Below, one piece after another: positions 15,107 to 53,463 of a stretch of 64,000 bases of DNA. The DNA comes from Vitrella brassicaformis CCMP3155. Taxonomy: Eukaryota > Protista > Chromerida. Below the pieces are notes generated by a model. The model was not told the DNA's origin and ran no database searches. It saw only the letters and a program-made list of their open reading frames with translations. The stretch is taken from assembly GCA_001179505.1 (NCBI GenBank), contig CDMY01000252.1, positions 1 to 64,000 on the forward strand, in the 5' to 3' direction. A program made the translations under genes and the position numbers. The stretch's first letter is position 1. The number at the start of each line of letters is the position of its first letter.

Positions 15107-15406
15107 NNNNNNNNNNNNNNNNNNNNNNNNNNNNNNNNNNNNNNNNNNNNNNNNNNNNNNNNNNNNNNNNNNNNNNNNNNNNNNNNNNNNNNNNNNNNNN
15201 NNNNNNNNNNNNNNNNNNNNNNNNNNNNNNNNNNNNNNNNNNNNNNNNNNNNNNNNNNNNNNNNNNNNNNNNNNNNNNNNNNNNNNNNNNNNNNNNNNNN
15301 NNNNNNNNNNNNNNNNNNNNNNNNNNNNNNNNNNNNNNNNNNNNNNNNNNNNNNNNNNNNNNNNNNNNNNNNNNNNNNNNNNNNNNNNNNNNNNNNNNNN
15401 NNNNNN
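15107..15406. other. Assembly gap (300 N placeholder)
   Basis: Exactly 300 N flanked by G-runs. Confidence 0.99.
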
Positions 15407-15934: not shown

Positions 15935-16234
15935 NNNNNNNNNNNNNNNNNNNNNNNNNNNNNNNNNNNNNNNNNNNNNNNNNNNNNNNNNNNNNNNNNN
16001 NNNNNNNNNNNNNNNNNNNNNNNNNNNNNNNNNNNNNNNNNNNNNNNNNNNNNNNNNNNNNNNNNNNNNNNNNNNNNNNNNNNNNNNNNNNNNNNNNNNN
16101 NNNNNNNNNNNNNNNNNNNNNNNNNNNNNNNNNNNNNNNNNNNNNNNNNNNNNNNNNNNNNNNNNNNNNNNNNNNNNNNNNNNNNNNNNNNNNNNNNNNN
16201 NNNNNNNNNNNNNNNNNNNNNNNNNNNNNNNNNN
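15935..16234. other. Assembly gap (300 N placeholder)
   Basis: Exactly 300 N flanked by G-runs. Confidence 0.99.
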
Positions 16235-17519: not shown

Positions 17520-17819
17520 NNNNNNNNNNNNNNNNNNNNNNNNNNNNNNNNNNNNNNNNNNNNNNNNNNNNNNNNNNNNNNNNNNNNNNNNNNNNNNNNN
17601 NNNNNNNNNNNNNNNNNNNNNNNNNNNNNNNNNNNNNNNNNNNNNNNNNNNNNNNNNNNNNNNNNNNNNNNNNNNNNNNNNNNNNNNNNNNNNNNNNNNN
17701 NNNNNNNNNNNNNNNNNNNNNNNNNNNNNNNNNNNNNNNNNNNNNNNNNNNNNNNNNNNNNNNNNNNNNNNNNNNNNNNNNNNNNNNNNNNNNNNNNNNN
17801 NNNNNNNNNNNNNNNNNNN
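17520..17819. other. Assembly gap (300 N placeholder)
   Basis: Exactly 300 N flanked by G-runs. Confidence 0.99.
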
Positions 17820-38942: not shown

Positions 38943-40449
38943 GGGAATGAGGGGATGAGGGGTGCGTGCGTGGGGGAGGGAGAGGTGTGGATGGCTGTGG
39001 ATGGACAGGGGGATAGATGGCACGTACAAGACGATCTATCTGTGCATATGTATGTATGTATGTGTGTGTGTGTGTAAAGACAACCAACGCCGCACGAGAG
39101 AGGATGAGCAAGTGCATTTGTTTGTAAGGACAGGAAGAGAGCAAGGGCGGGTCAGAATAGGTCGGTCCGTCGGTCGGTCATGGATGCACGTGTGGGGCCG
39201 CTTCTGCAGGCAGCGGACATACACGTACTTCCGCTCCAAGCCGAAGCCACACCGTGTACCATACCACTATTGTTTTTGATTGACATGTACACTCATCGTG
39301 CGTACGGCTGCTTTTGCGCATCCATCCGTGGGAGGTGTGGTGTGGTGTTGTTTGTCCAAGCTATCTATAGGGGGGCCGGCTGCATGGCATGTACAGATCG
39401 ATACAATGCAAGGAATGCAATGCTCACCCCATCCCATCTCACCCCACCGGCTTTCTTGCCGCATCGCTTCCCACTTACTGACTCACTCTGCTCGTCTGGA
39501 TGCACTCTCGTGCGTGTTGGAAGTGGACAGCACGCGCGAGGGAATGGCCGGCTGTCTACTGTCTTTGTGCATACAATCGAATCAGATGGATGGATGGATG
39601 GATGGCGGGGTTGGTTGCTCGTTCGTTTAGTGAGCTTTCTCTCTCACTCTCAAGCACATCGCTCTCTCTGTGCTTGCTCGCCGCCTCTGGCACTCACTGG
39701 GGCAGCACACAAGTTCCTGACTCAGCCACTTGAGTTGAGAGCATGTTCTGTGTTCTTCTCCACCTGTATGGCCAGGTGATGGATGGATGGATGGCAGCTC
39801 CGCTGGCCGTGGATGGATGCTGCATGTGCATGGCTGGCTGTGTGCAGACAGACCTTCTTGCATGCATGAGGTGTCGGTTGGATTCGACAGCTGATTGATT
39901 TGCCACAGCGTTCAAAACGCTTCGAGCTGCCACACACACAAGTGCGCTCATCCATCCATCTGCCGCTTGAGATGTAATGTAAGGTGGGCCTATGATTCGA
40001 GCTCTCGTGTGGCGTAGATACTTACGTCTCAACCGATCGATGACGGCTCTGCCATGGCCACAGATATGTACACCACTCGTCCATTCAGGTCAGATGCAGC
40101 TGCTGTCTTTCATATGCACATCAAATCTGCACCACGGCAGCTCCAAAAGCTCTCTTGAGGTATCACCACACAGATAGATGCAGCATTTCTCCATTTCTCC
40201 ATCGAATGCACCCATTTTCGACGATACAATCAGCCGAATTTTTGAACCTCGCTCTCATAGTGTCGCCTTCATCAAGCAGTGCCTGCGCTCCCGCGATGTT
40301 GGCAGCCGCTGACCTGATCAGACAGCGGCAAACCTGCATCGCGCGCGAGTACTTCACTTGACGAAGGACGAATACACGAGAGCGGCACGCTTGCCAGCAC
40401 ACCAAGCGCGAAAGCCCAAGTCAGCCATCCATCTAGCCCAGAGCATTAG

Positions 40450-41622
40450 CTAGTAAGTCAGCTCTTGGCCGTCCCACTGCAGGAACCTCCCGTTGTCCTC
40501 TCTGCCAGCCTCCTCCACTATCTTGGCTATTCCAGCAGCGCTCTCGTCGACGGGCAGTAGCGGCTCCAGCGGCGCACCCCCTGCTCGACCCATCTCGGTG
40601 TCGGCCGTGCCAGGATGCACAGAAATGAATGTGATGCCGTCGGTGTCATTCTTGGACTCCTCTAGCGCGAAATTCTTGACCAGCATGTTGGCCGCAGCTG
40701 CACCCATGCACGGACACGCAGACACCACCGACAGATGGGATTCGTTGAATTTTCATGTCGTGTGTCTGAGGGCGAAGCGCACCTTTGGAGCATCGGTAGC
40801 TGGTGATGGAACCCCTTCGGTGCATCGACAATGAGCCGGCGCGCGAGGAGATGACGACCACCAGCCGCCTGGATGACCGCCGCAGTAGGGGTGTGAATGT
40901 CTGGATGCAGTCGAGCACACCGCACACATTGACGTCGAACACGTGCAGCATGGCCGCACGGTCACAGGTCTGGGGGGGATCGCCGTGGACAGTGACGCCT
41001 GACGCACACACAAAGACAAACACGGGGACAGCGGAACAAGCATGCAGCGATGGCCGGACAGACAGCCTCCATGGTGTGTGTGTACCGGCATTGCAGATCA
41101 GGCAGTCGATTGTGTCGATGCCGTCCCTCTCCATGCTCGCCCTGGCAGCGGCAATCGACTCTGAGCTGCCGACGTCAAGCTGCATCCAACACACAACAAA
41201 CAGGTCACCCACATGGACACATAGTGCCGTGATCGGCCTGTTACCGGGTAGACGATGACCCGCCCCTTGCTGCCGTCCTGCGTGCTATTCGTCTTGCATG
41301 AGTCGGCGACCGCCTTGAGCTCCGTCGCACCCTGTGGATCTCGGCATGTGGCGACGATGGTGTGGCCTTTTGATATCAAATGCTTCGTCAGAGCCAGGCC
41401 GATTCCTCGAGAGCAGCCACTTATCAAGATCGTCTGCGTCTGCATCTTTGCTGTCTGCACGTCGGCTGCATCTGGATCTGTTGCAGCAGCTGCTCCAGCG
41501 GCGGCTGCCTTGCAGGCCGGGCGCTTCGCTGACCTCAGCAATGGCGCAGGTGCTGTCTGCGGCCTCAGCTGAATGAAGGCGCTCGCGAGAGAGATGCAGG
41601 TAGGCAGCAGCCACCACCGCAT
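40450..41622 (-). CDS. Short-chain dehydrogenase/reductase (CsgA/C-factor-like) with a bipartite plastid-targeting leader, 4 exons
   Basis: MRWWLLPTCISLASA|FIQLRPQTAPAPLLRSAKRP leader; ISGCSRGIG, CNAG, ISSRAGS, YRCSK, SVHPGTADTEMG, FLQWDGQEL. Confidence 0.9.
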
Positions 41623-43410
41623 TCACACTCCCCATTGAGCTTAGCTCGCAGACGTTTTCGAGCACCGAACCGCTTCTTTTCGCAAATCATGCAGACACTG
41701 CTGGTCACGGGGGCGTCAAGAGGCATCGGCCTGGCTCTGACGAAGCATTTTGTGTTCATGGGCCACACGGTGATTGCCACATGCCGAGATCCGCAGGGCG
41801 CCAAGGAGCTCAAGGCGCTCGCATCCGGCACAGCTGACACGCAGAACGGCATCAAGGGAAAGGTCACTGTTCACCAGGTGGGCAGGAAGACACCAAAAGA
41901 CCCCGGCGAGATCTCCATTTGCTGCACATGTGTGTGGTTGTGGGTCTGCAGCTGGATGTGTCCGTGTGTTTGTCGCAGGCCAGCAGGGCGTCGGTGACGC
42001 CTGTGCAGAAGGCATATATTGTGTCGTTGCAGGTCTGGAGGCGTCCAAGTCCTTCGAGCCGCCCGCAGCGCTCATCCAGACCATCACACACGCAGCAAAT
42101 GTCGTACCACCAAGAGAGACTCGAGATGCCCGCACGCAAGTATGGAGTTTTCGGCCGGCAGGTGTATGAGCCTGACTACTCGAGTCGGCTGGGTGAGGGC
42201 GACTATGACTTCCGATCGAGCCATGGCAGACAGACGGTCGATGCATTCCTTTGTTATCTGGCGGACACTTCTATGTCGATGTTTGCCATCTGTCGATGTT
42301 TGCCTGATGTGTCAGGTCTAGTGACTCACAGAGAATACATGTGTACATATGACACAAACACGATCGATTGTCTGTACACAATGCATGTGCGACACACTCA
42401 CAGAGAGAGCCGCTGATTGTGTCACACACACTCAGAGAGCACTGACTCACTGCCGCAATCACAGACAAGAGAGAATCAGCAAGTAAGCGCGAGACCCGTC
42501 CGGTGCTGTATAGAGGTCGCAGCCGTCCCCTGGACCTCCTCCACCATTCATGCATCTTTTCCGCCTCTCTTCCGCCTTCTCAGCACTCTGTTCTCGCTTT
42601 CCCTCTTCTCGTTCTCTGCTACCTGCACTCTCTGTGTCTCATGACTGGACTCACACACTCCGCCACAGTGGGCACAACAACACCAGCGTCCTTCTGCTCG
42701 GCGCAGGTGTGTGTGTTGCTGCGTTTGCGTCGGGTGACGCGCGTCCTTCTGCTCAGTGTGACTCGGTATGTGTGACTGAGGGGAGGAAGAGTGGACATAC
42801 ACTGTCAGTGTCACTGTGGCTGTGTGTATGTCTGTGTTGTCTCACTCTCAGGTGCCCTGTTTGTGTGACCAGACCCAAGTGAGCGTCAACTCTACCTTGG
42901 GCAACAATGAGGTCCACCACACACACACACTCACACACACATACACTCAACTGACATGTCTCTTGCAGGACATCACTTGTTCACTGTGTCTCTCTTCATT
43001 GCTTGTCAGTTTGTGTTCCTGCCGGAGTGTGACACCGTACGCACCAACCTGCTCAAGAGAGCTCAGCGCCTCACAACTCACCACAAGCACATCGAGGCAC
43101 CCGACGTGAGATAACTGGAGCTCGCGCCTGAGGAGACACACAACTCACGTCGGGTGTGTTGTGTGTGTTTGTGTCTCCTCAGGCGCGAGTCCGTTCTGAG
43201 GGTATCAGTGCTCATCATGCCCACACCAGAGCATGGCAGGCGGAGTCGGGCTTGACAGACCGCACCATCACTACATGCGCCAAGTCGTCCGTGTGTGCAA
43301 CCGACCGACTCGTCGCCAACCAAGCGCTCAGCTCCCGCTCGGTCGGTGATCCACTCGTGTGTTGGTTGGCATGGCATCAACACATGTGTTGTGTGTTTCT
43401 TTTTCTGCAG

Positions 43411-44711
43411 GTGTTTGATGCGTGGATTGTCAAGACGACCAAGCGCACCGACTCATCCAAGGCCGCACAGCCCAACCCCAAGTCGGTGTCCCACAAGGCC
43501 ATCCAGAAGCGTCAGAGAGCAGCAGCAGCAGCAGCCCCCCAGGCCACAGCTGCAGCAGCAGCAGCGGCGTCTGAGGAGAAGGATGATGACCAGCCCATGG
43601 CCGTTGACCCACCAGCAGCAGCAGCAGCGGCAGCATCCAAGTCACCGCTGCAGCTGGCATTGGAGCAGACGCAGTCCGACGGCCGTGTCATCCGCCGCAC
43701 GAATGACAACGAGGCCGTGGCCCTACCCGGTATGGCCAGATCAGCCACACCGGGATGTATGTGTACTGTGTGGATGGGTGTTGTGTGCAGCATGGGTGGA
43801 GCTCGACCCACTGTTCCATCCGCAGGCCACCCGGTGGGAAGACGACGCCTCTGAGGAGGACGACGCGGCACCACACCTGCCCGCAGAGCAGGGCGGCAGG
43901 CGGGTCCCCGACGATCGCACTCAGTCGGAGTTCCGCGCCTGGGGGAAGCACCTCTGCACCCGCGTACGACGAGTGGGCAGCACGGCTCAGCAGCCGCACT
44001 ACTTCTGCACAGTCGCTGAGGTGAGCGATGTTGTGGGGCGCGGGGGGGGGGGGGGCGNNNNNNNNNNNNNNNNNNNNNNNNNNNNNNNNNNNNNNNNNNN
44101 NNNNNNNNNNNNNNNNNNNNNNNNNNNNNNNNNNNNNNNNNNNNNNNNNNNNNNNNNNNNNNNNNNNNNNNNNNNNNNNNNNNNNNNNNNNNNNNNNNNN
44201 NNNNNNNNNNNNNNNNNNNNNNNNNNNNNNNNNNNNNNNNNNNNNNNNNNNNNNNNNNNNNNNNNNNNNNNNNNNNNNNNNNNNNNNNNNNNNNNNNNNN
44301 NNNNNNNNNNNNNNNNNNNNNNNNNNNNNNNNNNNNNNNNNNNNNNNNNNNNNNNNNTTGGGGGGGGGGGGGGGGGGGGGGGCGTGTGTCCGTCTGACTG
44401 CTTCTGTCTATGTGTGTGTGCTCCAGGTGGATGATCTCTGGTCGGATTTCGAGGTCTTGCGCACATGGTCTCTGGTCCGCAAGCACCCTGACCTTGTGCG
44501 CAAGGCCTTCAAAGACCCGATCGACAACAACACACAATCCGCATTCCTCAAGGCGGTCGGGGCGGTGATGGGGTATACCCAGGTGCATCGTCTCCGCCAC
44601 GGCTACTCGTGGAACATAGGGACGACGTGCGCCAACACCAACGATGCCACCGGCAGGTATGTGAACCCCTCCCCCTCCCCTCATCCAATCCCTCACACAC
44701 ACACCTCTCTC

Positions 44712-44743
<32 letters not shown>

Positions 44744-46620
44744 ATGTCTGTGTGTCTCAGGCTGGGGGTCTACGCCAATCTCGCCATACGCATCTCGGTG
44801 GCCTACTACAGCCCCGACCACATGCGCAACCTCCACATCAACGACTGGCTGGACGCAATGCGCGCGATACCCTTCATTGCCGCCGTCGGCAATGCGCGCG
44901 GCGACCTCAAGAAAGCCCTCAACATTGGCGTCAAGGCCTACAACGAGCTGGCGACCCGACAGGCCAACATAGACGCCATCTATCGTCACGAGTACAACGA
45001 GACGCGTCGCGCCGCCATGGGTGGGTGGACAAGACAGAGAGCAACACACACAGACGGCGCCACACACACAAGCCCATCACACGTTCTGATGTGTGGCAGG
45101 TGGATTTCGTTTGTCGCGCAGTGAGACCGACCCGTTCACCGCCGCGCACGTGACGCCGAACGCCACTCAAGCGATCTCGATGGTACGTGTGCCGTATCGC
45201 AATCATATCGCAGCATTCGCATCTCAGTCTATGTGTCCGTGTCTATGTGTCTAAGGGTGGTTTCGAGCTGCTGGCGAGTGGGCATCTGTGGCGCGAGTGG
45301 AGCGCAGACCCGTTCTTTGTTGAGCGGTTCGACACGTCCAAGGCCCGCGGCGCATGTCAGCCACGACACACACACACGAAAGGGAGATGAGCGGACTTCT
45401 GTGTCTGGTGTGTCCCTTTATCAGCCAAGTGTCAGTTGTTCCGCAAACTGACTCTCGAGTTCATCAAGTCAGTGCCCAACGCAGACCTCCACAAATCAAT
45501 GAGAGAGGTATGACTGAGATGCGCATCAGACTGACATCCATCAGCCTGACTGTAATTGTGGTGTGTGTGTGAATTGTTGGTGTCAGATTCTCGGTGGAGC
45601 CCCACTCCGCGACGTCGTCAGGCGCACAAGTCATCCAAAGTTCGTGGGCCGTGTTGAGGCCATCTCCAACCTCAGATTCGTCGAGCCACAACAGGCAAGC
45701 TGGACTGAATGGGAGACACAGATGTGTTCTGAATCTGTGGCGCTGTCACGTTCCTGCAGCATCTCTCGTTCTCAACGACGCGGCACTTCCTGCCGAGTGG
45801 CATCCCCCGCATCTACAACAGCGAACTCCGCTTCACCACAACCATCTTCAACTATGGTAAGCCACACAGCAGCGAGCATGGGCATTGAGGACTTTGCTGT
45901 CTGGGGTTTGCAGGTCATGAGGAGGCGTTGACAGTCATGTTGGCGCGCATCGAGAGCCTGACAAGCAAAGGCCTCATCGATGCCACGCCGGTGAGGCAAT
46001 CACACACTGGAGACATTGGTGATGCCTAAGGATGATGCACATTGTCTCCTGTCAGTTCAATTCCCCGTCGGACTTCCCCCACGCTGCCAAGCTGGACAAG
46101 GACAACCGTGAGGGCAAAAAGACGTGAGCAACACAAGGGTGCGACACGCCAAGCTCTGTGAATGTGTGTGTTTCTGCTGGCGTTATATTTGCAGGTATTG
46201 GGGTGTCTACGTGTCATCGACCACCAAGCCCTTCAAGGTTGGCATCGATTTCCAGTCCATCGCGACTCACACCCGCAGAACGGTACGAGCACATAGACAG
46301 ACAGACAGACAGTGTCTCTCCATCTCTCTGTATCCGCCACACAGGTGGCGGAGATTCGCGCGGCCGTCAGTGAGGCCCTCGGTCGACCTGTGCAGGCGGA
46401 TGCCAAGACCACGTGCGTCAAAATGCCCAAGGCCAAGACATCGAAGCAGGCACTGGCGATCGCAGATGTCACCCTCGCACAGCTCAAACGACAACGTGAG
46501 TGTGTGACGGATATACGCACACGTCATCTCACGATGATCATCTCATGATGTGTTGTTGCAGGCATCTTGTTCGGCAAGTCGGAGGCGGGCATAGCTCACG
46601 TCGCAAGTCTGAGATCCTGA
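43411..46620 (+). CDS. Element-borne multi-exon gene (>=12 exons; 5' exons probably from ~42099) with a tyrosine-recombinase-like motif
   Basis: High-GC3 exons with canonical splice sites; AFLKAVGAVMGYTQVHRLRHGYSWNIG...GRLGVYANLAIRISVAYY across intron ~44657-44760; stop TGA 46618-46620. The recombinase call rests on the motif only. Confidence 0.6.
44058..44357. other. Assembly gap (300 N placeholder) inside the insertion
   Basis: Exactly 300 N flanked by G-runs. Confidence 0.99.
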
Positions 46621-47878
46621 GCAGTGTCGGTGTACGTGTGGATGGCGTGTTGTCTACACGTGTGGACGGTGTGTACATATTCAGACCGTACATAAAGCAT
46701 TCCTGTTGAACAGGTCATCGAGTAGCCTGTGGCCGTCGGGTACACGGATCTGTGTGCGTGGTGCACTTGCACATCGAGGATGTGTTGAGCCGTCAGTCCA
46801 TCAAGGATGCGTTAAAGAGCGTCCAGAAGGAGGGCATCGACACAATCGACTGCCTGATCTGCAATGCAGGTCAACAACACGTCAGCGCACTGTCACTTTC
46901 TTTGCCGCATTCTCACGTGGCAACTGTCTGTGTGTGTGCAGGCATAGCCACTGAGGGTCACCCCAACGACTCGGCACAATCGTGTGACCGAGCGGCCATG
47001 CTGCACGTGTTCGACGTCAATGTGGCCGGCGTGCTCGACTGCATCCAGACCTTCACCCCACTGCTGCGCCGCTCCGACAAGCGTCTGGTGCTGTGCATCT
47101 CGTCGCGCCTCGGCAGCATCGAGCTCAACGACACCGGCAACATCACGGCATACCGCGTGTCGAAGGCCGCTCTCAACATGCTGGTCAAGACGTTCGCTGT
47201 GGATGAGGCCAAGAGGCAGATCTCTGACGGCCTGGCGGTGGTGGCGGTGCATCCCGGCTGGACTGACACGGACATGGGGCGGTCAGGGGACAGGAAGCCC
47301 CCCCTGCCGCTCAACGAGTGTGTGGAGGGCATCGCCAAGCTGATGGCCGAGTGCAGTGCCAAGGACAGTGGCAAGTTTGTGCAGTGGGATGGGCAGGAGC
47401 TGCCATGGTAGAAAGGTTCTGGGCTGGGCTGCTGGGCTGCTTGAGAGTTTTTTTCTGTCTAATTAGAGAAGGGAGGCGCTCTCGTGTGTGTGTTCGTCCT
47501 TCATTCAGTGGCCTTCCAGTTTGCGATCTCGGTTTGCCGGTGTCTGATCAGTTCAGCGGTTGCCAAGATCGCCGAGTGTGGGGCCAGCTTGATGAAGGTG
47601 ACACTATGAGAGCGAGGGAAGGAAGCTGCATCTACGCGTGCACCCGTGTGGTGAGAGCTCAAAGAGCTGCATGTGTGTGATGTGCACTGCAACTCACTGG
47701 ATGGATGCCGTGGCCGACTTGCCAGCATGTGTTGATAGAGGAGCCAGAATGTATGTGTCCATAGAACATGCACGAGGACTGCCAGCACGTGCGCAACTCG
47801 CATGAAGATCTTCCTCCGCGATCAGACGTGGGGGCGTTGGGGGCGGAGGAAGACGCGACTCAGATGTGGGGCCTCGCG

Positions 47879-50537: not shown

Positions 50538-51516
50538 TCATTTGGCGGGGCGGGCGGGGCAGCAGCAGCAGCAGCAGTGGCCGCAGCCACACAGGGGGTT
50601 GACCCACCAGGGGCACATGTGGCTCTCGTCGCCGCCGCCCGCCTCCTCCCCCTCGATGACGACCTCCCTGGCCTCAGGTGCGGGCGATCCCTCGGTGATG
50701 CTGGTGTGCTGGGAGGGCTCCTGAGACGTGTGCTGCTGCGGGGTCGTGGGGGTGGTGTCGCCGCTGCTGGTGGGGTTGGCCTCTTTGAAGGCGTCGATGG
50801 CGGCGTCGACAGCCAGGCCTCGCACCTGTGCTCCGCCTGCAACAGCTTAGCCGCCTGGGCCTGCTGCTTCATCTTCTCCTCCTCCGCCCTCAGGAGCTCC
50901 CGGATCTCCTGCCGCCTCTTCTCCAGAAAAGCCTCCTTGGCCTCCAGCTCCTGCCGCCTCTTCTGGGCCCGCTCCTCCTGGGCCCTCTTGAGCTCCCGGC
51001 GCTTCTCCGCGATCGCGGCCTTCCGGGCAGTCTGCCTCTCGTGGAGTTCCTGGCACGTGGCCCGACGGGCCTTGCGCTCCTTGGCGAGCTGCAAGCCAGA
51101 TGGACACCAAGGGAGAGAAGACACACACACAGATCTTTCACTAGCGCATGCATCCCCGCTCTCATCGCCATACGTACCGGGTGTGGGCGTCCTAGGCTTC
51201 CCTTGGCCCCCTCCTCCCACTTGTGCACCCTCTCGAGCAGGTCGCGGGCCTCCTTCAACGCTACGAACGCGCTGCCGTCCCCGCCCTTGTCGGGGTGTTT
51301 GTAGTCGCCGGACTGCACACACAGCCAGCACATTCAGCCAGCCACCAGCTCTCACGCCCGCCCCCAGTGCACGTGTGGACGTAACAGCGCCTTCTTCTTG
51401 TAAGCGTTCTTGGCCTCCTCAAACTCCGTGAACCACTTGACGCCCAGCGTCTCGCTGGCGGCCTGGGCGCCACGGAGGACTCCTGGCTCGAGCTGAGGGC
51501 TGCTGCAGTTTGCCAT
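50538..51516 (-). pseudogene. J-domain (DnaJ-like) protein copy A, probably degenerate
   Basis: EAKNAYKKKAL...YKHPDKGGDGSAFVALKEARDLL. The first intron donor reads TTACGT where copy B has GTAAGT, and a 1-nt deletion near 50828 shifts the frame relative to copy B. Confidence 0.65.
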
Positions 51517-51993
51517 GATGGATGCACCTCAACAGCCAGACTACCCTGATATACACACACCCAGCAGGCATGATTGATCAGAGGGCAGTGGAGTGCAGCC
51601 ACGTGCTGTGCCTGACCTCTTGCTGAGTCAGCGCGAATGTCTGTTGCTGTGTCGGCGGGTATCTGGAGCCGTGGTGGAGGTGGTCGGGCTGGTTGGGGTA
51701 GGAGGGAGTCACCCACGACGGGAAGCCACTGCCAGACACTGACAACGAGTGGAAGCGAAACACACACACTCTCTCTCTCTCTGTGTGTGTGTGTGTCTGT
51801 GTGTGTGTGTGTTATCGCCACGTACCAATCGGATGACTGAAGTCCATGCGGAAGGTTATCTCCGGCTGCCCGATGACCCGGGGCTCGTACAAACGCCTGC
51901 CGACCACACACGACAAATACTCATATGGATCCCCTCCCTCCTCGGCTTCCTGTGTGGCCTACTGAATGATCTGATTGTCGGGGAGGCACTCAT

Positions 51994-53003
51994 CTATCGG
52001 GTTGAATGGATGGAGCCCACACGCCACTGATTCTGACCCACATGCACCACAACACACACACGCATACAAATCAGACATATAGACACACATACACGTCTTG
52101 ACTTACCTCCCGAGCGGCATCTGAACAGCGACAGAGGGCCACGAGTCGGACCTGGAGCGTACCCATGGCATCCGCCGCGTACGTCGCCTCCTGCTGCTTC
52201 AAACCGATCGCCACCTGCACGCCGTAACGCCAAACCACACACACATACCCACGGTAAATGGACGGTGGTGCTGGTGTGCTGGGAGGGCTCCTGGGGCGTG
52301 TGCTGGGGGGTCGTGGGGGTGGTGTCGCCGCCGCTGGTGGGGTTGGCCTCGATGAAGGCGTCGATGGCGGCGTCGACAGCCACGCCTCCCACCTTGACCT
52401 CCGCCAGCAACAGCTTAGCCGCCTGGGCCTGCTGCATCATCTTCTCCTCCTCCTGCGCCCTCACGAACTCCCGGAGCTCCTCCCGCCATTTCTCCGCAAT
52501 CGCGGCCTTCTGGGCCTTGAGCTTCTCGTGCAGCTCGTGGCACGTGGCCCGACGCGCCTTGCGCTCCTCGGCTAGCTGCAAGCCAAATAGACACCCAGGG
52601 AGAAAAAGCACACACATAGATCTTTCAATTGCGCATGCATCCCCGCTCTCAGTGGCATCTGTACCGGGTGTGGGCGTCCTAGGCATCCCTTGGCCCCCTC
52701 CTCCCACTTGTGCACCCTCTCGAGCAGGTCGCGGGCCTCCTTCAACGCTACGAACGCGCTGCCGTCCCCGCCCTTGTCGGGGTGCTTGTACTCGCCGGAC
52801 TGCACACACAGCCAGCACATTCAGCCAGCCACCAGCTCTCACGCCAGCCCTCATTGCACATCCGGACTTACCAGCGCCTTCTTCCTGTATGCCTTCTTGG
52901 CCTCCTCAAACTCCGTGAACCAGGCGACACCCAGCTTTTCGCTAGCGGCCTGGGCGCCACTGAGGTCTCCTGGCTCGAGCTGAGGGTTGCTGCAGTTTGC
53001 CAT
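51994..53003 (-). CDS. J-domain (DnaJ-like) protein copy B with coiled coil
   Basis: MANCSNPQLEPG...EAKKAYRKKAL|SGEYKHPDKGGDGSAFVALKEARDLL, then a charged helix; 3' end uncertain. Confidence 0.72.
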
Positions 53004-53463
53004 GATGTTTTGCGACAAAGAGAGGGGACGCCCAGCCTCTCCCCGCCTCCCATCACTCACCCGCCCGCACTAGCTGATCCCGAAGCTGCAAGAGCCGCAG
53101 CGATGGGGTAGCGGACAGAGGCTCTTCAGGCAGCAGCGAATGGATGAAGGAATGGTGCAGCGGTGAATTGCTGTTGAAATACACCGTGCCGGTGAAAAAG
53201 AAAGCAAGTAAGAAACGTCTCCGTCTCTCGAAAGAAAGAAACTCCCGACGTTAATTCTCGCCGGAGAATTGCGAACCTTTTGGTGCGAGCTTATATTCGA
53301 CAGTGTCTTGTTGTCGGGCTTCCGGCGTTTCCAAGGCTGCACAGGAGATCCGGACATCCCCACAGCCCCCCTGTGTGGTTCGGTGCTGAGATCTCGGCGC
53401 TTCACTCATCCACGGGGAAACTGCCTGTTGTGTCCCCCTTGGCTTGTGCTCCTCTGCTGCGCC

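What the first reader, a model, noticed from the sequence alone, without database searches (positions are those of the whole stretch)
41954..46785. 4.8 kb gene-carrying insertion with exact 8-bp flanking direct repeats and no TIRs, splitting an SDR exon
Left junction: cag|CT-GGATGTGT-ccgtg; right junction: catcga-GGATGTGT-tgagcc. Excision restores CTG GAT GTG TTG AGC CGT... = LDVLSRQSIKDALKSVQKEGIDTIDCLICNA, collinear without gaps with the paralogue's LDVGSSESIAAARASMERDGIDTIDCLICNA. The SDR halves have intact frames, so the event looks recent. I see no TIRs, LTRs, poly-A tail, reverse transcriptase or DDE motif. The right junction forms a dyad (cacatc-gag-gatgtg, 46770-46784) resembling a recombinase half-site pair. 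Short direct repeats, no TIRs and an intron-rich gene fit Crypton-type tyrosine-recombinase transposons of fungi, oomycetes and animals. I know of none from chromerids or apicomplexans. Best candidate for an undescribed system here.
Basis: partly seen in the sequence, partly recalled or inferred. Interest (0 to 1): 0.88.

Follow-up and report, generated by a model that had tools for sequence, protein, structure and literature searches.

The report
Orphan gene inserted into dehydrogenase exon
In the alga Vitrella brassicaformis, about 4.8 kb of DNA carrying one complete gene with no known relatives sits inside an exon of a dehydrogenase gene, flanked by an 8-base duplication; the insertion is real, but nothing shows it to be a Crypton or any other known transposon.

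Summary
GGATGTGT occurs at 41954-41961 and 46778-46785. Keeping one copy rejoins exon 2 of a short-chain dehydrogenase (SDR) gene in frame and gap-free against its intact paralogue next door.

The window is Vitrella brassicaformis CCMP3155, scaffold CDMY01000252.1. The assembly gap lies inside an intron of the inserted gene, between two phase-0 exons and between two G-runs. It is a 300-N placeholder, so continuity is likely but not proven.

The insert carries one + strand gene of at least 14 confident exons. Its codon bias and intron sizes match the host's. The protein has no Pfam, PHROG, NCBIfam or PDB match and no homologue or paralogue in the large protein collections.

There are no TIRs, no shared subterminal motifs, no tyrosine recombinase, DDE or RT domain, and no second copy. 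The Crypton reading is therefore unsupported.

The public 1087-aa protein CEL97025.1 is a chimera of SDR, insert and SDR.

Best reading: one staggered-cut insertion of a single-copy, gene-sized unit. It is either recent or tolerated because it is spliced out. The only AG-ending register is GA...AG, a pattern known from dinoflagellate introners. The agent is unknown. RNA-seq and whole-genome searches would decide.

The parts
41689..41877 (+). Split SDR gene (SDR-S), exon 1 (MQTLLVTGASRGIG...KVTVHQ); ends in phase 0
   Evidence: The stop-free stretch holding it matches Pfam adh_short profile 2-59.
41878..41951 (+). SDR-S intron 1, 74 nt, GT...CAG; same position and phase as in the paralogue
41952..41961 (+). 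First 10 bases of SDR-S exon 2 (CTGGATGTGT); the left 8-bp repeat copy is 41954-41961
41962..46777 (+). Inserted segment: 4816 positions, of which 300 are gap placeholder (4516 known bases). No TIRs, no shared subterminal motifs, no other copy in the window.
42099..46620 (+). Inner orphan gene. Possible start ATG at 42099, stop TGA at 46618-46620. Confident exons run from 43411 onward (14 exons, 43411-46620). The model exons at 41952-43344 are doubtful: three of their four donors are weak (GTC).
   Evidence: No family, structure or homologue found.
44058..44357 (.). Assembly gap (300 N placeholder) inside intron 44021-44426 of the inner gene; G-runs on both sides
46778..46785 (+). Right 8-bp repeat copy (GGATGTGT), which continues as SDR-S exon 2
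46786..46869 (+). Rest of SDR-S exon 2 (..LSRQSIKDALKSVQKEGIDTIDCLICNAG)
46942..47411 (+). SDR-S exon 3 with the S, YxxxK and HPGW motifs and stop TAG at 47409-47411. Intron 2 (46870-46941) is shared in position with the paralogue.
40450..41445 (-). Intact paralogue SDR-P (P0001, 252 aa), head to head with SDR-S; serves as a paralogous empty site. The inverted duplication extends about 200 bp past both stop codons (40247-40690 versus 47617-47174).
46600..46796 (+). 197-nt 'intron' of the public model CEL97025.1. It joins the inner gene's last exon to a cryptic acceptor inside SDR-S exon 2, skipping the inner stop codon and the LDVLSRQ codons. This is the join that makes the chimera.

Best explanation
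A single DNA insertion event placed a gene-sized unit (about 4.5-4.8 kb, one complete + strand gene with roughly 140-160 bp of flank on each side) ten bases into exon 2 of SDR-S. SDR-S is the more conservative of two head-to-head SDR paralogues in Vitrella brassicaformis.

Shown:
- The target was opened with an 8-base stagger that was filled in, leaving GGATGTGT on both sides.
- The SDR halves are otherwise undamaged.
- The unit is single copy at the protein level.
- It carries no hallmark of any described transposon superfamily.
- The public 1087-aa protein is an artefactual chimera of SDR-S and the inner gene.

Inferred:
- There is no second copy, yet SDR-S shows no decay. The event was therefore a cut-and-paste type move that is very recent. 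My rough estimate, not a tool result, is under about 1% neutral divergence; otherwise a 705-nt coding sequence would be expected to carry a disabling mutation.
- SDR-S is now interrupted and tolerated because the paralogue remains.
- The agent is a transposase-like staggered cleavage acting on a TIR-less unit. Whether the orphan protein is that enzyme is unknown; I put it at about 0.15-0.2. It could equally be a host gene moved in trans or by break repair.
For: - Exact 8-bp repeat in the coding register; one copy restores a gap-free alignment with the paralogue.
- The two SDR halves meet at the same point of the Pfam profile: positions 2-59 and 57-189.
- Chance of a shared 8-mer at this spacing is 5e-5.
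- Both junctions lie inside contigs of a k=75 velvet assembly checked with REAPR, so an 8-bp identity cannot have caused a misjoin (PMC4501334).
- SDR-S is intact and closer to outgroup SDRs than the intact paralogue is. Exon 3 scores 143 versus 105 bits to P0002 and 115 versus 84 bits to P0003.
- The inner protein finds only itself. Searched: 1.84 billion representatives with one exon, and 5.8 billion clusters with residues 280-880 and 420-880.
- No copy of the insert elsewhere in the window.
- The chimeric nature of CEL97025.1 is shown by exon mapping.
Against: - A single locus cannot show mobility.
- No TIRs, no subterminal repeats and no known enzyme domain.
- Eighteen host-sized introns and host-like GC3 are unusual for a transposon gene. 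Woo et al. flagged transposon genes in Vitrella only if they had at most 2 introns.
- Vitrella has very little class 2 transposon DNA and no annotated hAT.
- SDR-S conservation is equally explained if the insert is removed by splicing.
- Unannotated or degenerate DNA copies elsewhere in the genome could not be searched.
- The two halves of the insert are joined only by scaffolding across a gap.
Confidence: 0.5

Rival explanations
1. The insert is, or has become, a working intron of SDR-S that hosts a same-strand nested gene: an intron gained by insertion. Splicing from GA at 41955 to AG at 46777-46778 would restore the SDR message exactly. Splicing from GT at 41958 to the same AG would add one Asp (LDDV). 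The event could then be old, and both repeat copies would be preserved because they are coding or splice-site bases.
For: - SDR-S is fully intact and more conservative than its paralogue.
- The inner gene is single copy and host-like, so no recent donor is needed.
- Among the nine possible registers, exactly one ends in AG, and it starts with GA.
- In dinoflagellates, introner-like elements with 8-nt duplications use the 5' end of the duplication as donor and the element's 3' end as acceptor. GA donors are enriched in newly gained introns there (preprint 10.1101/2020.10.14.339549).
- Autonomous-size and unclassifiable introners are known (PMC12130899).
Against: - A G[ACT]...AG register among nine arises by chance about 1 time in 10 (my estimate).
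- All 20 acceptors of the local gene model are CAG or AAG, preceded by a T/G-rich tract. This one is GAG after gcacttgcacatc.
- No GA donor appears among the 20 local introns, although the predictor would not propose one.
- Local introns are 57-104 nt, apart from three longer ones (615, 406 and 197 nt) that lie in the doubtful 5' exons, hold the gap, or make the chimeric join; none approaches 4.8 kb.
- A same-strand nested gene brings its own 3' end signal into the intron.
- GA-AG use in chromerids is undocumented in the papers I could search.
Confidence: 0.22
2. One reading: a Crypton-like or otherwise novel self-mobilising element. The orphan protein would be an unrecognised recombinase or transposase. 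The 8-mer would be either the crossover site of a circular intermediate or a target-site duplication.
For: - No TIRs, with short direct repeats.
- A single gene tightly bracketed by the insertion ends.
- Single copy plus an undecayed host gene fits cut-and-paste.
- A stretch HRLRH...YY in the exons at 44427-45020 loosely resembles a recombinase box II. This is my reading, not a test.
- A weak dyad at the right junction.
Against: - No Phage_integrase, DUF3435, DDE or any other family at E<=1 in Pfam, PHROGs or NCBIfam.
- No PDB sequence match.
- No homologue anywhere, so no family.
- Structure models were too poor to test the fold: pLDDT 34 and 48, and Foldseek found nothing.
- Crypton repeats are 4-6 bp.
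- The dyad has the wrong geometry and there is none at the left junction.
- Eighteen introns.
Confidence: 0.1
3. There was no insertion. Two tandem SDR-S copies once flanked the inner gene, and complementary deletions removed the 3' part of one and the 5' part of the other.
For: The SDR family has duplicated locally: there is a head-to-head paralogue.
Against: - It needs a duplication plus two independent deletions whose ends overlap by exactly 8 bp within a roughly 700-nt coding sequence.
- There is no SDR remnant in the 158 bp between the inner stop codon and the right junction, nor after the left junction.
Confidence: 0.03
4. Assembly or scaffolding artefact: the SDR halves and the inner gene are not really contiguous.
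For: A gap sits in the middle of the insert, so the left and right junctions are on different contigs. The assembly is short-read only.
Against: - Each junction lies more than 2 kb inside a contig built with k=75, so 8 shared bases cannot create a join.
- The two contigs carry complementary SDR halves in the same orientation, and exons of one gene in matching phase.
- The G-runs on both sides explain the break.
Confidence: 0.04
5. The public model is right: a genuine 1087-aa fusion protein with a large domain inserted into the SDR fold.
For: The frame stays open from exon 2 into the insert for 96 codons, and the model keeps the frame throughout.
Against: - The linker translates as S/R/P-rich non-protein-like sequence.
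- The model skips the inner gene's own stop codon through an atypical 197-nt intron with a GTCGCA donor.
- It drops the conserved LDV motif.
- Augustus cannot model same-strand nested genes (established knowledge).
Confidence: 0.03

Closest known systems
Crypton (tyrosine-recombinase DNA transposons; Goodwin 2003, Kojima & Jurka 2011, PMC3212892)
   Same: No TIRs, short direct repeats at both ends, a single intron-containing gene, and a presumed cut-and-paste move.
   Different: No tyrosine-recombinase domain or R-H-R-Y tetrad is detectable. The repeats are 8 bp rather than 4-6 bp. No family of copies exists. There is no GCR1_C or other known accessory domain.
Cut-and-paste DNA transposons with 8-bp target duplications (hAT, P, Zisupton, Novosib, some MULEs; from established knowledge)
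   Same: An exact 8-bp target-site duplication and one gene bracketed by short non-coding ends.
   Different: No TIRs, no shared subterminal motifs, and no DDE, hAT-dimerisation, MULE or KDZ domain. hAT is annotated at 0 bp in Vitrella.
Introner-like elements of dinoflagellates with 8-nt duplications (Roy et al., preprint 10.1101/2020.10.14.339549; Gozashti et al., PMC12130899)
   Same: Insertion into an exon in a myzozoan. An 8-nt duplication whose 5' part can act as a G[ACT] donor while the element's end supplies AG. Exact restoration of the message if spliced.
   Different: Introners are mostly short, non-autonomous, multi-copy and TIR-bearing. This unit is 4.8 kb, single copy and gene-carrying, has a poor GAG acceptor, and its splicing is untested.
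Single-gene transposition or relocation flanked by short repeats, and same-strand nested genes (described in plants and animals; from my own knowledge, not checked here)
   Same: A complete host-like gene found at a new site, bounded by short direct repeats and lying inside another gene.
   Different: No donor site or paralogue can be identified, and the landing site is an exon rather than an intron or intergenic DNA.

Membership tests
Crypton | Encodes a tyrosine recombinase with the R-H-R-Y catalytic tetrad | tested here: not met
   Pfam on every exon and on P0121 and its parts at E<=1: no Phage_integrase, DUF3435 or DUF3504. PHROGs and NCBIfam: none. A very remote relationship cannot be excluded, because no alignment or confident structure could be made.
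Crypton | No TIRs; short (4-6 bp) direct repeats at the termini | tested here: inconclusive
   No TIRs. The direct repeat is present but is 8 bp. The described range is 4-6 bp.
Crypton | A family of copies with the same termini in different flanks | tested here: not met
   No paralogue among annotated proteins or in the large collections and none in the window. A DNA-level search of the whole genome was not possible with these tools.
hAT and other 8-bp-TSD DDE transposons | 8-bp target-site duplication | tested here: met
   GGATGTGT on both sides.
hAT and other 8-bp-TSD DDE transposons | Terminal inverted repeats | tested here: not met
   The best inverted match near the ends is 7 nt, and one copy is about 29 nt internal. 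No shared subterminal motifs.
hAT and other 8-bp-TSD DDE transposons | DDE/RNase-H-like transposase (hAT dimerisation domain, MULE, KDZ and so on) | tested here: not met
   No Pfam hit on either strand.
Introner / introner-like element | The insertion is removed from the mRNA by the spliceosome, using splice sites from the duplication and the element's end | not testable with these tools
   A GA(41955)...AG(46778) register and a GT(41958)...AG register exist. No transcript data are available here.
Introner / introner-like element | A multi-copy family making introns in many genes | tested here: inconclusive
   No other copy in the window. The whole genome is not searchable here.
Non-LTR / LTR retroelement or retrocopy | Reverse transcriptase, LTRs or a poly-A tail; a retrocopy lacks introns | tested here: not met
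   No RT domain. No A- or T-run at either end. No long direct repeats. Eighteen introns are retained.
Classical short-chain dehydrogenase/reductase (the interrupted host gene) | adh_short domain with TGxxxGxG, NNAG-like, Ser and YxxxK motifs | tested here: met
   adh_short E=3e-19 for the right stretch and 4.9e-6 for the left one, profile 57-189 and 2-59. Motifs TGASRGIG, CNAG, SSRLGS and YRVSK are read.

The most novel reading that the evidence does not exclude
The segment is the only assembled copy of an undescribed, TIR-less mobile element of chromerids. It would make 8-bp target duplications and be moved by its own protein, a recombinase or transposase with no detectable relative. It may survive in exons by being spliced out through a GA-AG register, in effect an autonomous 'giant introner' in the sister lineage of apicomplexans.
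Probability: 0.1. Interest if true: 0.8.

Novelty: new member of a known kind. Interest (0 to 1): 0.4.

Why it matters
If it is only a one-off insertion, the practical value is a correction. UniProt A0A0G4EKE1 / CEL97025.1 is a chimera of two genes: a conserved SDR and an orphan gene.

If the unit proves mobile or is spliced out, it would be the first gene-carrying, duplication-flanked element described from chromerids. These organisms have a transposon-poor genome next to the apicomplexans. It would also tie chromerids to the introner-driven intron gain known from dinoflagellates.

Either outcome can be decided cheaply with the public reads of this strain.

Tried and rejected
**Domain searches.** Pfam on every stop-free stretch of the insert, on both strands, and on the public model and its parts. 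PHROGs. NCBIfam. There were no hits beyond chance-level ones (E>=0.019).

**Solved structures by sequence**: nothing.

**Homologue searches.**
- The exhaustive search with the 86-aa exon found only the gene itself plus spurious TPR repeats.
- Word-indexed searches with residues 280-880 and 420-880 found nothing.

**Collection scans.** The metagenome scan found only an unrelated contiguous SDR. The viral scan found nothing.

**Structure prediction.** Without an alignment, pLDDT was 34 and 48, and Foldseek gave no hit with E<0.2. These models are unusable.

**RNA and repeat checks.**
- Rfam, tRNA and tandem-repeat scans of the region showed only a hairpin.
- Searches for TIRs and shared subterminal motifs were negative.
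- A Helitron reading fails: the ends are not TC...CTRR and the element does not sit between A and T.
- A retrocopy reading fails: introns are kept and there is no poly-A.

I did not build, search or fold a joined sequence of the exons or of the restored SDR. The only full-length sequence used was the public database protein P0121, by id.

**What could not be done here.** Searching the rest of the Vitrella genome, Chromera DNA, or any reads.
Full report
**Where this is.** The best protein match to the right-hand SDR stretch is a Vitrella brassicaformis CCMP3155 protein (P0001). An exact look-up of the public model places the region on scaffold CDMY01000252.1 of GCA_001179505.1. Window coordinates equal record coordinates. 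The public model covering the finding is CEL97025.1 / A0A0G4EKE1, 1087 aa (P0121).

**The gap, tested first.**
- Positions 44058-44357 are N. All four gaps in the window are exactly 300 N, so the length is a placeholder.
- The gap lies in an intron of the inserted gene. The upstream exon ends in phase 0 at 44020 before gtgagc. The downstream exon starts in phase 0 at 44427 after ccag.
- Both edges are G-runs: about 14 G before and 23 G after. This is the kind of homopolymer that breaks short-read assemblies.
- The known bases of this intron add up to 106 nt, close to the 57-104 nt of the neighbouring introns. Little or nothing is probably missing.
- Continuity is still not proven. No homologue spans the gap, because the protein has none. 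The left and right junctions therefore sit on two contigs joined by scaffolding.
- What ties the contigs together independently is that they carry complementary halves of one SDR gene in the same orientation, plus same-strand, phase-compatible exons of one inner gene.

**The observation.**
- GGATGTGT is at 41954-41961 and 46778-46785.
- Upstream lie SDR exon 1 (41689-41877) and a 74-nt GT-AG intron. Exon 2 starts CTGGATGTGT and then breaks off. It resumes at the right copy and runs to 46869, followed by a 72-nt intron and exon 3 ending at the stop codon 47409-47411.
- Pfam adh_short covers profile positions 2-59 in the left stop-free stretch, which holds exon 1, and 57-189 in the right one.
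- The intact paralogue lies head to head on the minus strand (41445-40450). It has the same phase-0 intron before LDV and an uninterrupted exon 2, so it serves as a paralogous empty site.
- With exactly one copy of the 8-mer, the split gene aligns to the paralogue without a gap.
- The 8-mer is over-represented in this GT-rich genome (8 occurrences on the + strand). Even so, pairs at this spacing share an 8-mer only 5e-5 of the time, and both copies sit in the required coding register.
- The assembly used velvet with k=75, SSPACE scaffolding and REAPR checking (PMC4501334). Eight shared bases cannot have produced either junction, and each junction lies more than 2 kb inside its contig.

**What the insert carries.**
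- There is one + strand gene. Mapping the public model gives 21 exons.
- From 43411 to the natural stop TGA at 46618-46620 there are 14 exons. Their donors are 11 GTR (GTG or GTA), one GTC (45356) and one GC; all acceptors are YAG. GC3 is 0.64-0.84 and the introns are 57-104 nt.
- These are the same figures as for the SDR exons and introns.
- The model exons between 41952 and 43344 are doubtful. Three of their four donors are GTC-type, and the coding signal there is ambiguous.
- A plausible own start is the ATG at 42099, which leaves 137 bp to the left end. The stop leaves 157 bp (46621-46777) to the right end.
- The public model is a chimera. It reads from SDR exon 2 straight into the insert. 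At the far end it skips the inner stop codon by splicing from 46600 (GTCGCA) over 197 nt to a cryptic CAG at 46796 inside SDR exon 2, dropping the LDVLSRQ codons.

**What the inner protein is.** It remains unknown.
- No Pfam family for any exon or for the model and its parts.
- None in PHROGs or NCBIfam.
- No solved structure by sequence.
- None for minus-strand open stretches.
- An exhaustive HMMER search of 1.84 billion representatives with the 86-aa exon found only the gene itself and five spurious TPR-repeat proteins.
- Word-indexed searches of 5.8 billion clusters with residues 280-880 (candidates of 598-1902 aa) and 420-880 (candidates of 254-807 aa) found nothing else.
- Scans of metagenome and viral contigs found no relative of the inner part.
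- With no alignment, AlphaFold models were unusable (pLDDT 34 and 48) and Foldseek gave nothing.
- The gene is therefore a single-copy orphan, with no paralogue in the annotated Vitrella proteome and no relative in Chromera.

**Transposon hallmarks.**
- Apart from the 8-bp duplication there are none. There are no TIRs and no long direct or inverted terminal repeats. The small repeats near the two ends share no motif.
- There is no poly-A or T-run, no RT, no DDE and no recombinase domain.
- The right-junction dyad (CACATC-GAG-GATGTG) is real. However, 2.2% of positions in the window lie in such a dyad, the left junction has none, and one arm lies inside the repeat rather than flanking it. This is not the architecture of a tyrosine-recombinase site.
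- Described Cryptons have 4-6-bp repeats and, by definition, a tyrosine recombinase (PMC3212892).
- Vitrella is reported to hold only 1.5 Mb of transposon DNA, with hAT at 0 bp and Helitron at 18 kb.

**State of the interrupted gene.**
- SDR-S has no stop codon or frameshift. It keeps TGASRGIG, CNAG, the catalytic Ser and YxxxK, and both conserved introns.
- Piece by piece, it is more similar to outgroup SDRs than the intact paralogue is. Exon 3 scores 143 versus 105 bits to P0002 and 115 versus 84 bits to P0003.
- The insertion is therefore either very young or does not abolish function.

**Two ways to reconcile the facts.**

(a) *A recent cut-and-paste insertion.* Exon-disrupting insertions seen in a reference genome are usually young. 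A paralogue is present to buffer the loss. The absence of a second copy fits a move rather than a duplication.

(b) *The insert is spliced out.*
- Of the nine possible registers only one ends in AG. It runs from GA at 41955 to AG at 46777-46778 and would restore the message exactly.
- A canonical GT at 41958 with the same AG would add one Asp.
- In dinoflagellates, the neighbouring lineage, introner-like elements with 8-nt duplications use the 5' end of the duplication as donor and the element's end as acceptor. GA donors are typical of newly gained introns there (preprint 10.1101/2020.10.14.339549).
- Introners derive from many transposon types, including unclassifiable ones (PMC12130899).
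- Against (b): such a register arises by chance about once in ten (my estimate). The acceptor is GAG without the usual T/G-rich tract, while all 20 local acceptors are CAG or AAG. Local introns are under about 100 nt, apart from three longer ones that lie in the doubtful 5' exons, hold the gap, or make the chimeric join. A same-strand nested gene brings its own 3' end. I found no report of GA-AG introns or introners in chromerids.

I rate (a) at about 0.5 and (b) at about 0.2. They share the same origin, one insertion with an 8-base stagger.

**Other rivals.**
- Tandem duplication plus reciprocal deletions needs three events with an 8-bp coincidence and leaves no predicted remnants.
- Misassembly is unlikely, for the reasons given above.
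- A true 1087-aa fusion protein is unlikely, given the non-protein-like linker and the atypical bridging intron.

**Limits.**
- I could not search the rest of the Vitrella genome, Chromera DNA, or any reads. 'Single copy' therefore rests on annotated proteins and large protein collections.
- I did not build or search a joined sequence of exons or of the restored SDR. The only full-length sequence used was the public protein, by its id.

**Verdict.** The insertion reading is supported. The Crypton reading is not. This is a real, tidy, single-locus oddity whose nature can be settled with the strain's public RNA-seq and DNA reads.

Noticed in passing
window 43121-43189 (+), inside the insert: A perfect 20-nt inverted repeat with a 29-nt loop (CTCGCGCCTGAGGAGACACA ... 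its reverse complement). As RNA it folds at -55.5 kcal/mol, z = -7.1. It is unique in the window. The public model places an intron acceptor inside its right arm. It has no flanking duplication, and it gives only weak miRNA-like Rfam hits, far below threshold.
   Followed up: partly
window 50693-51520 and 52263-53007: Two tandem segments 88-89% identical at the DNA level, each with long open stretches of similar Pro/Ala-rich translation. This looks like a recent local tandem gene duplication.
   Followed up: no
window 40247-41408 versus 41720-47617: The two SDR genes form an inverted (head-to-head) duplication whose similarity (68-75%) runs about 200 bp past both stop codons. The arms are separated by about 310 bp that must hold both promoters. 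The paralogue has one extra phase-1 intron (about 40698-40781) that SDR-S lacks.
   Followed up: partly
window 15107-15406, 15935-16234, 17520-17819, 44058-44357: All four assembly gaps are exactly 300 N, a placeholder length. The apparent low GC at 15-18 kb and 44-45 kb in the composition table is largely caused by the Ns being counted.
   Followed up: partly
window 41689-47411 (public protein CEL97025.1 / A0A0G4EKE1): The deposited 1087-aa protein merges two genes: SDR-S and the orphan gene. Its Pfam annotation (adh_short) comes only from the two ends.
   Followed up: yes
window 45695-45759: One GC-AG intron (cag|GCAAGC). Six of the 20 model introns have GTC donors, including the conserved SDR intron 2 (GTCAAC). 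Donor sites in this genome therefore tolerate weak +3 to +6 positions.
   Followed up: partly
P0002 (EukProt EP00051_Salpingoeca_urceolata_P013869) and P0003-P0120: After the Vitrella paralogue, the closest relative of this SDR is from a choanoflagellate transcriptome, followed by metagenomic, mostly bacterial-looking SDRs.
   Followed up: no
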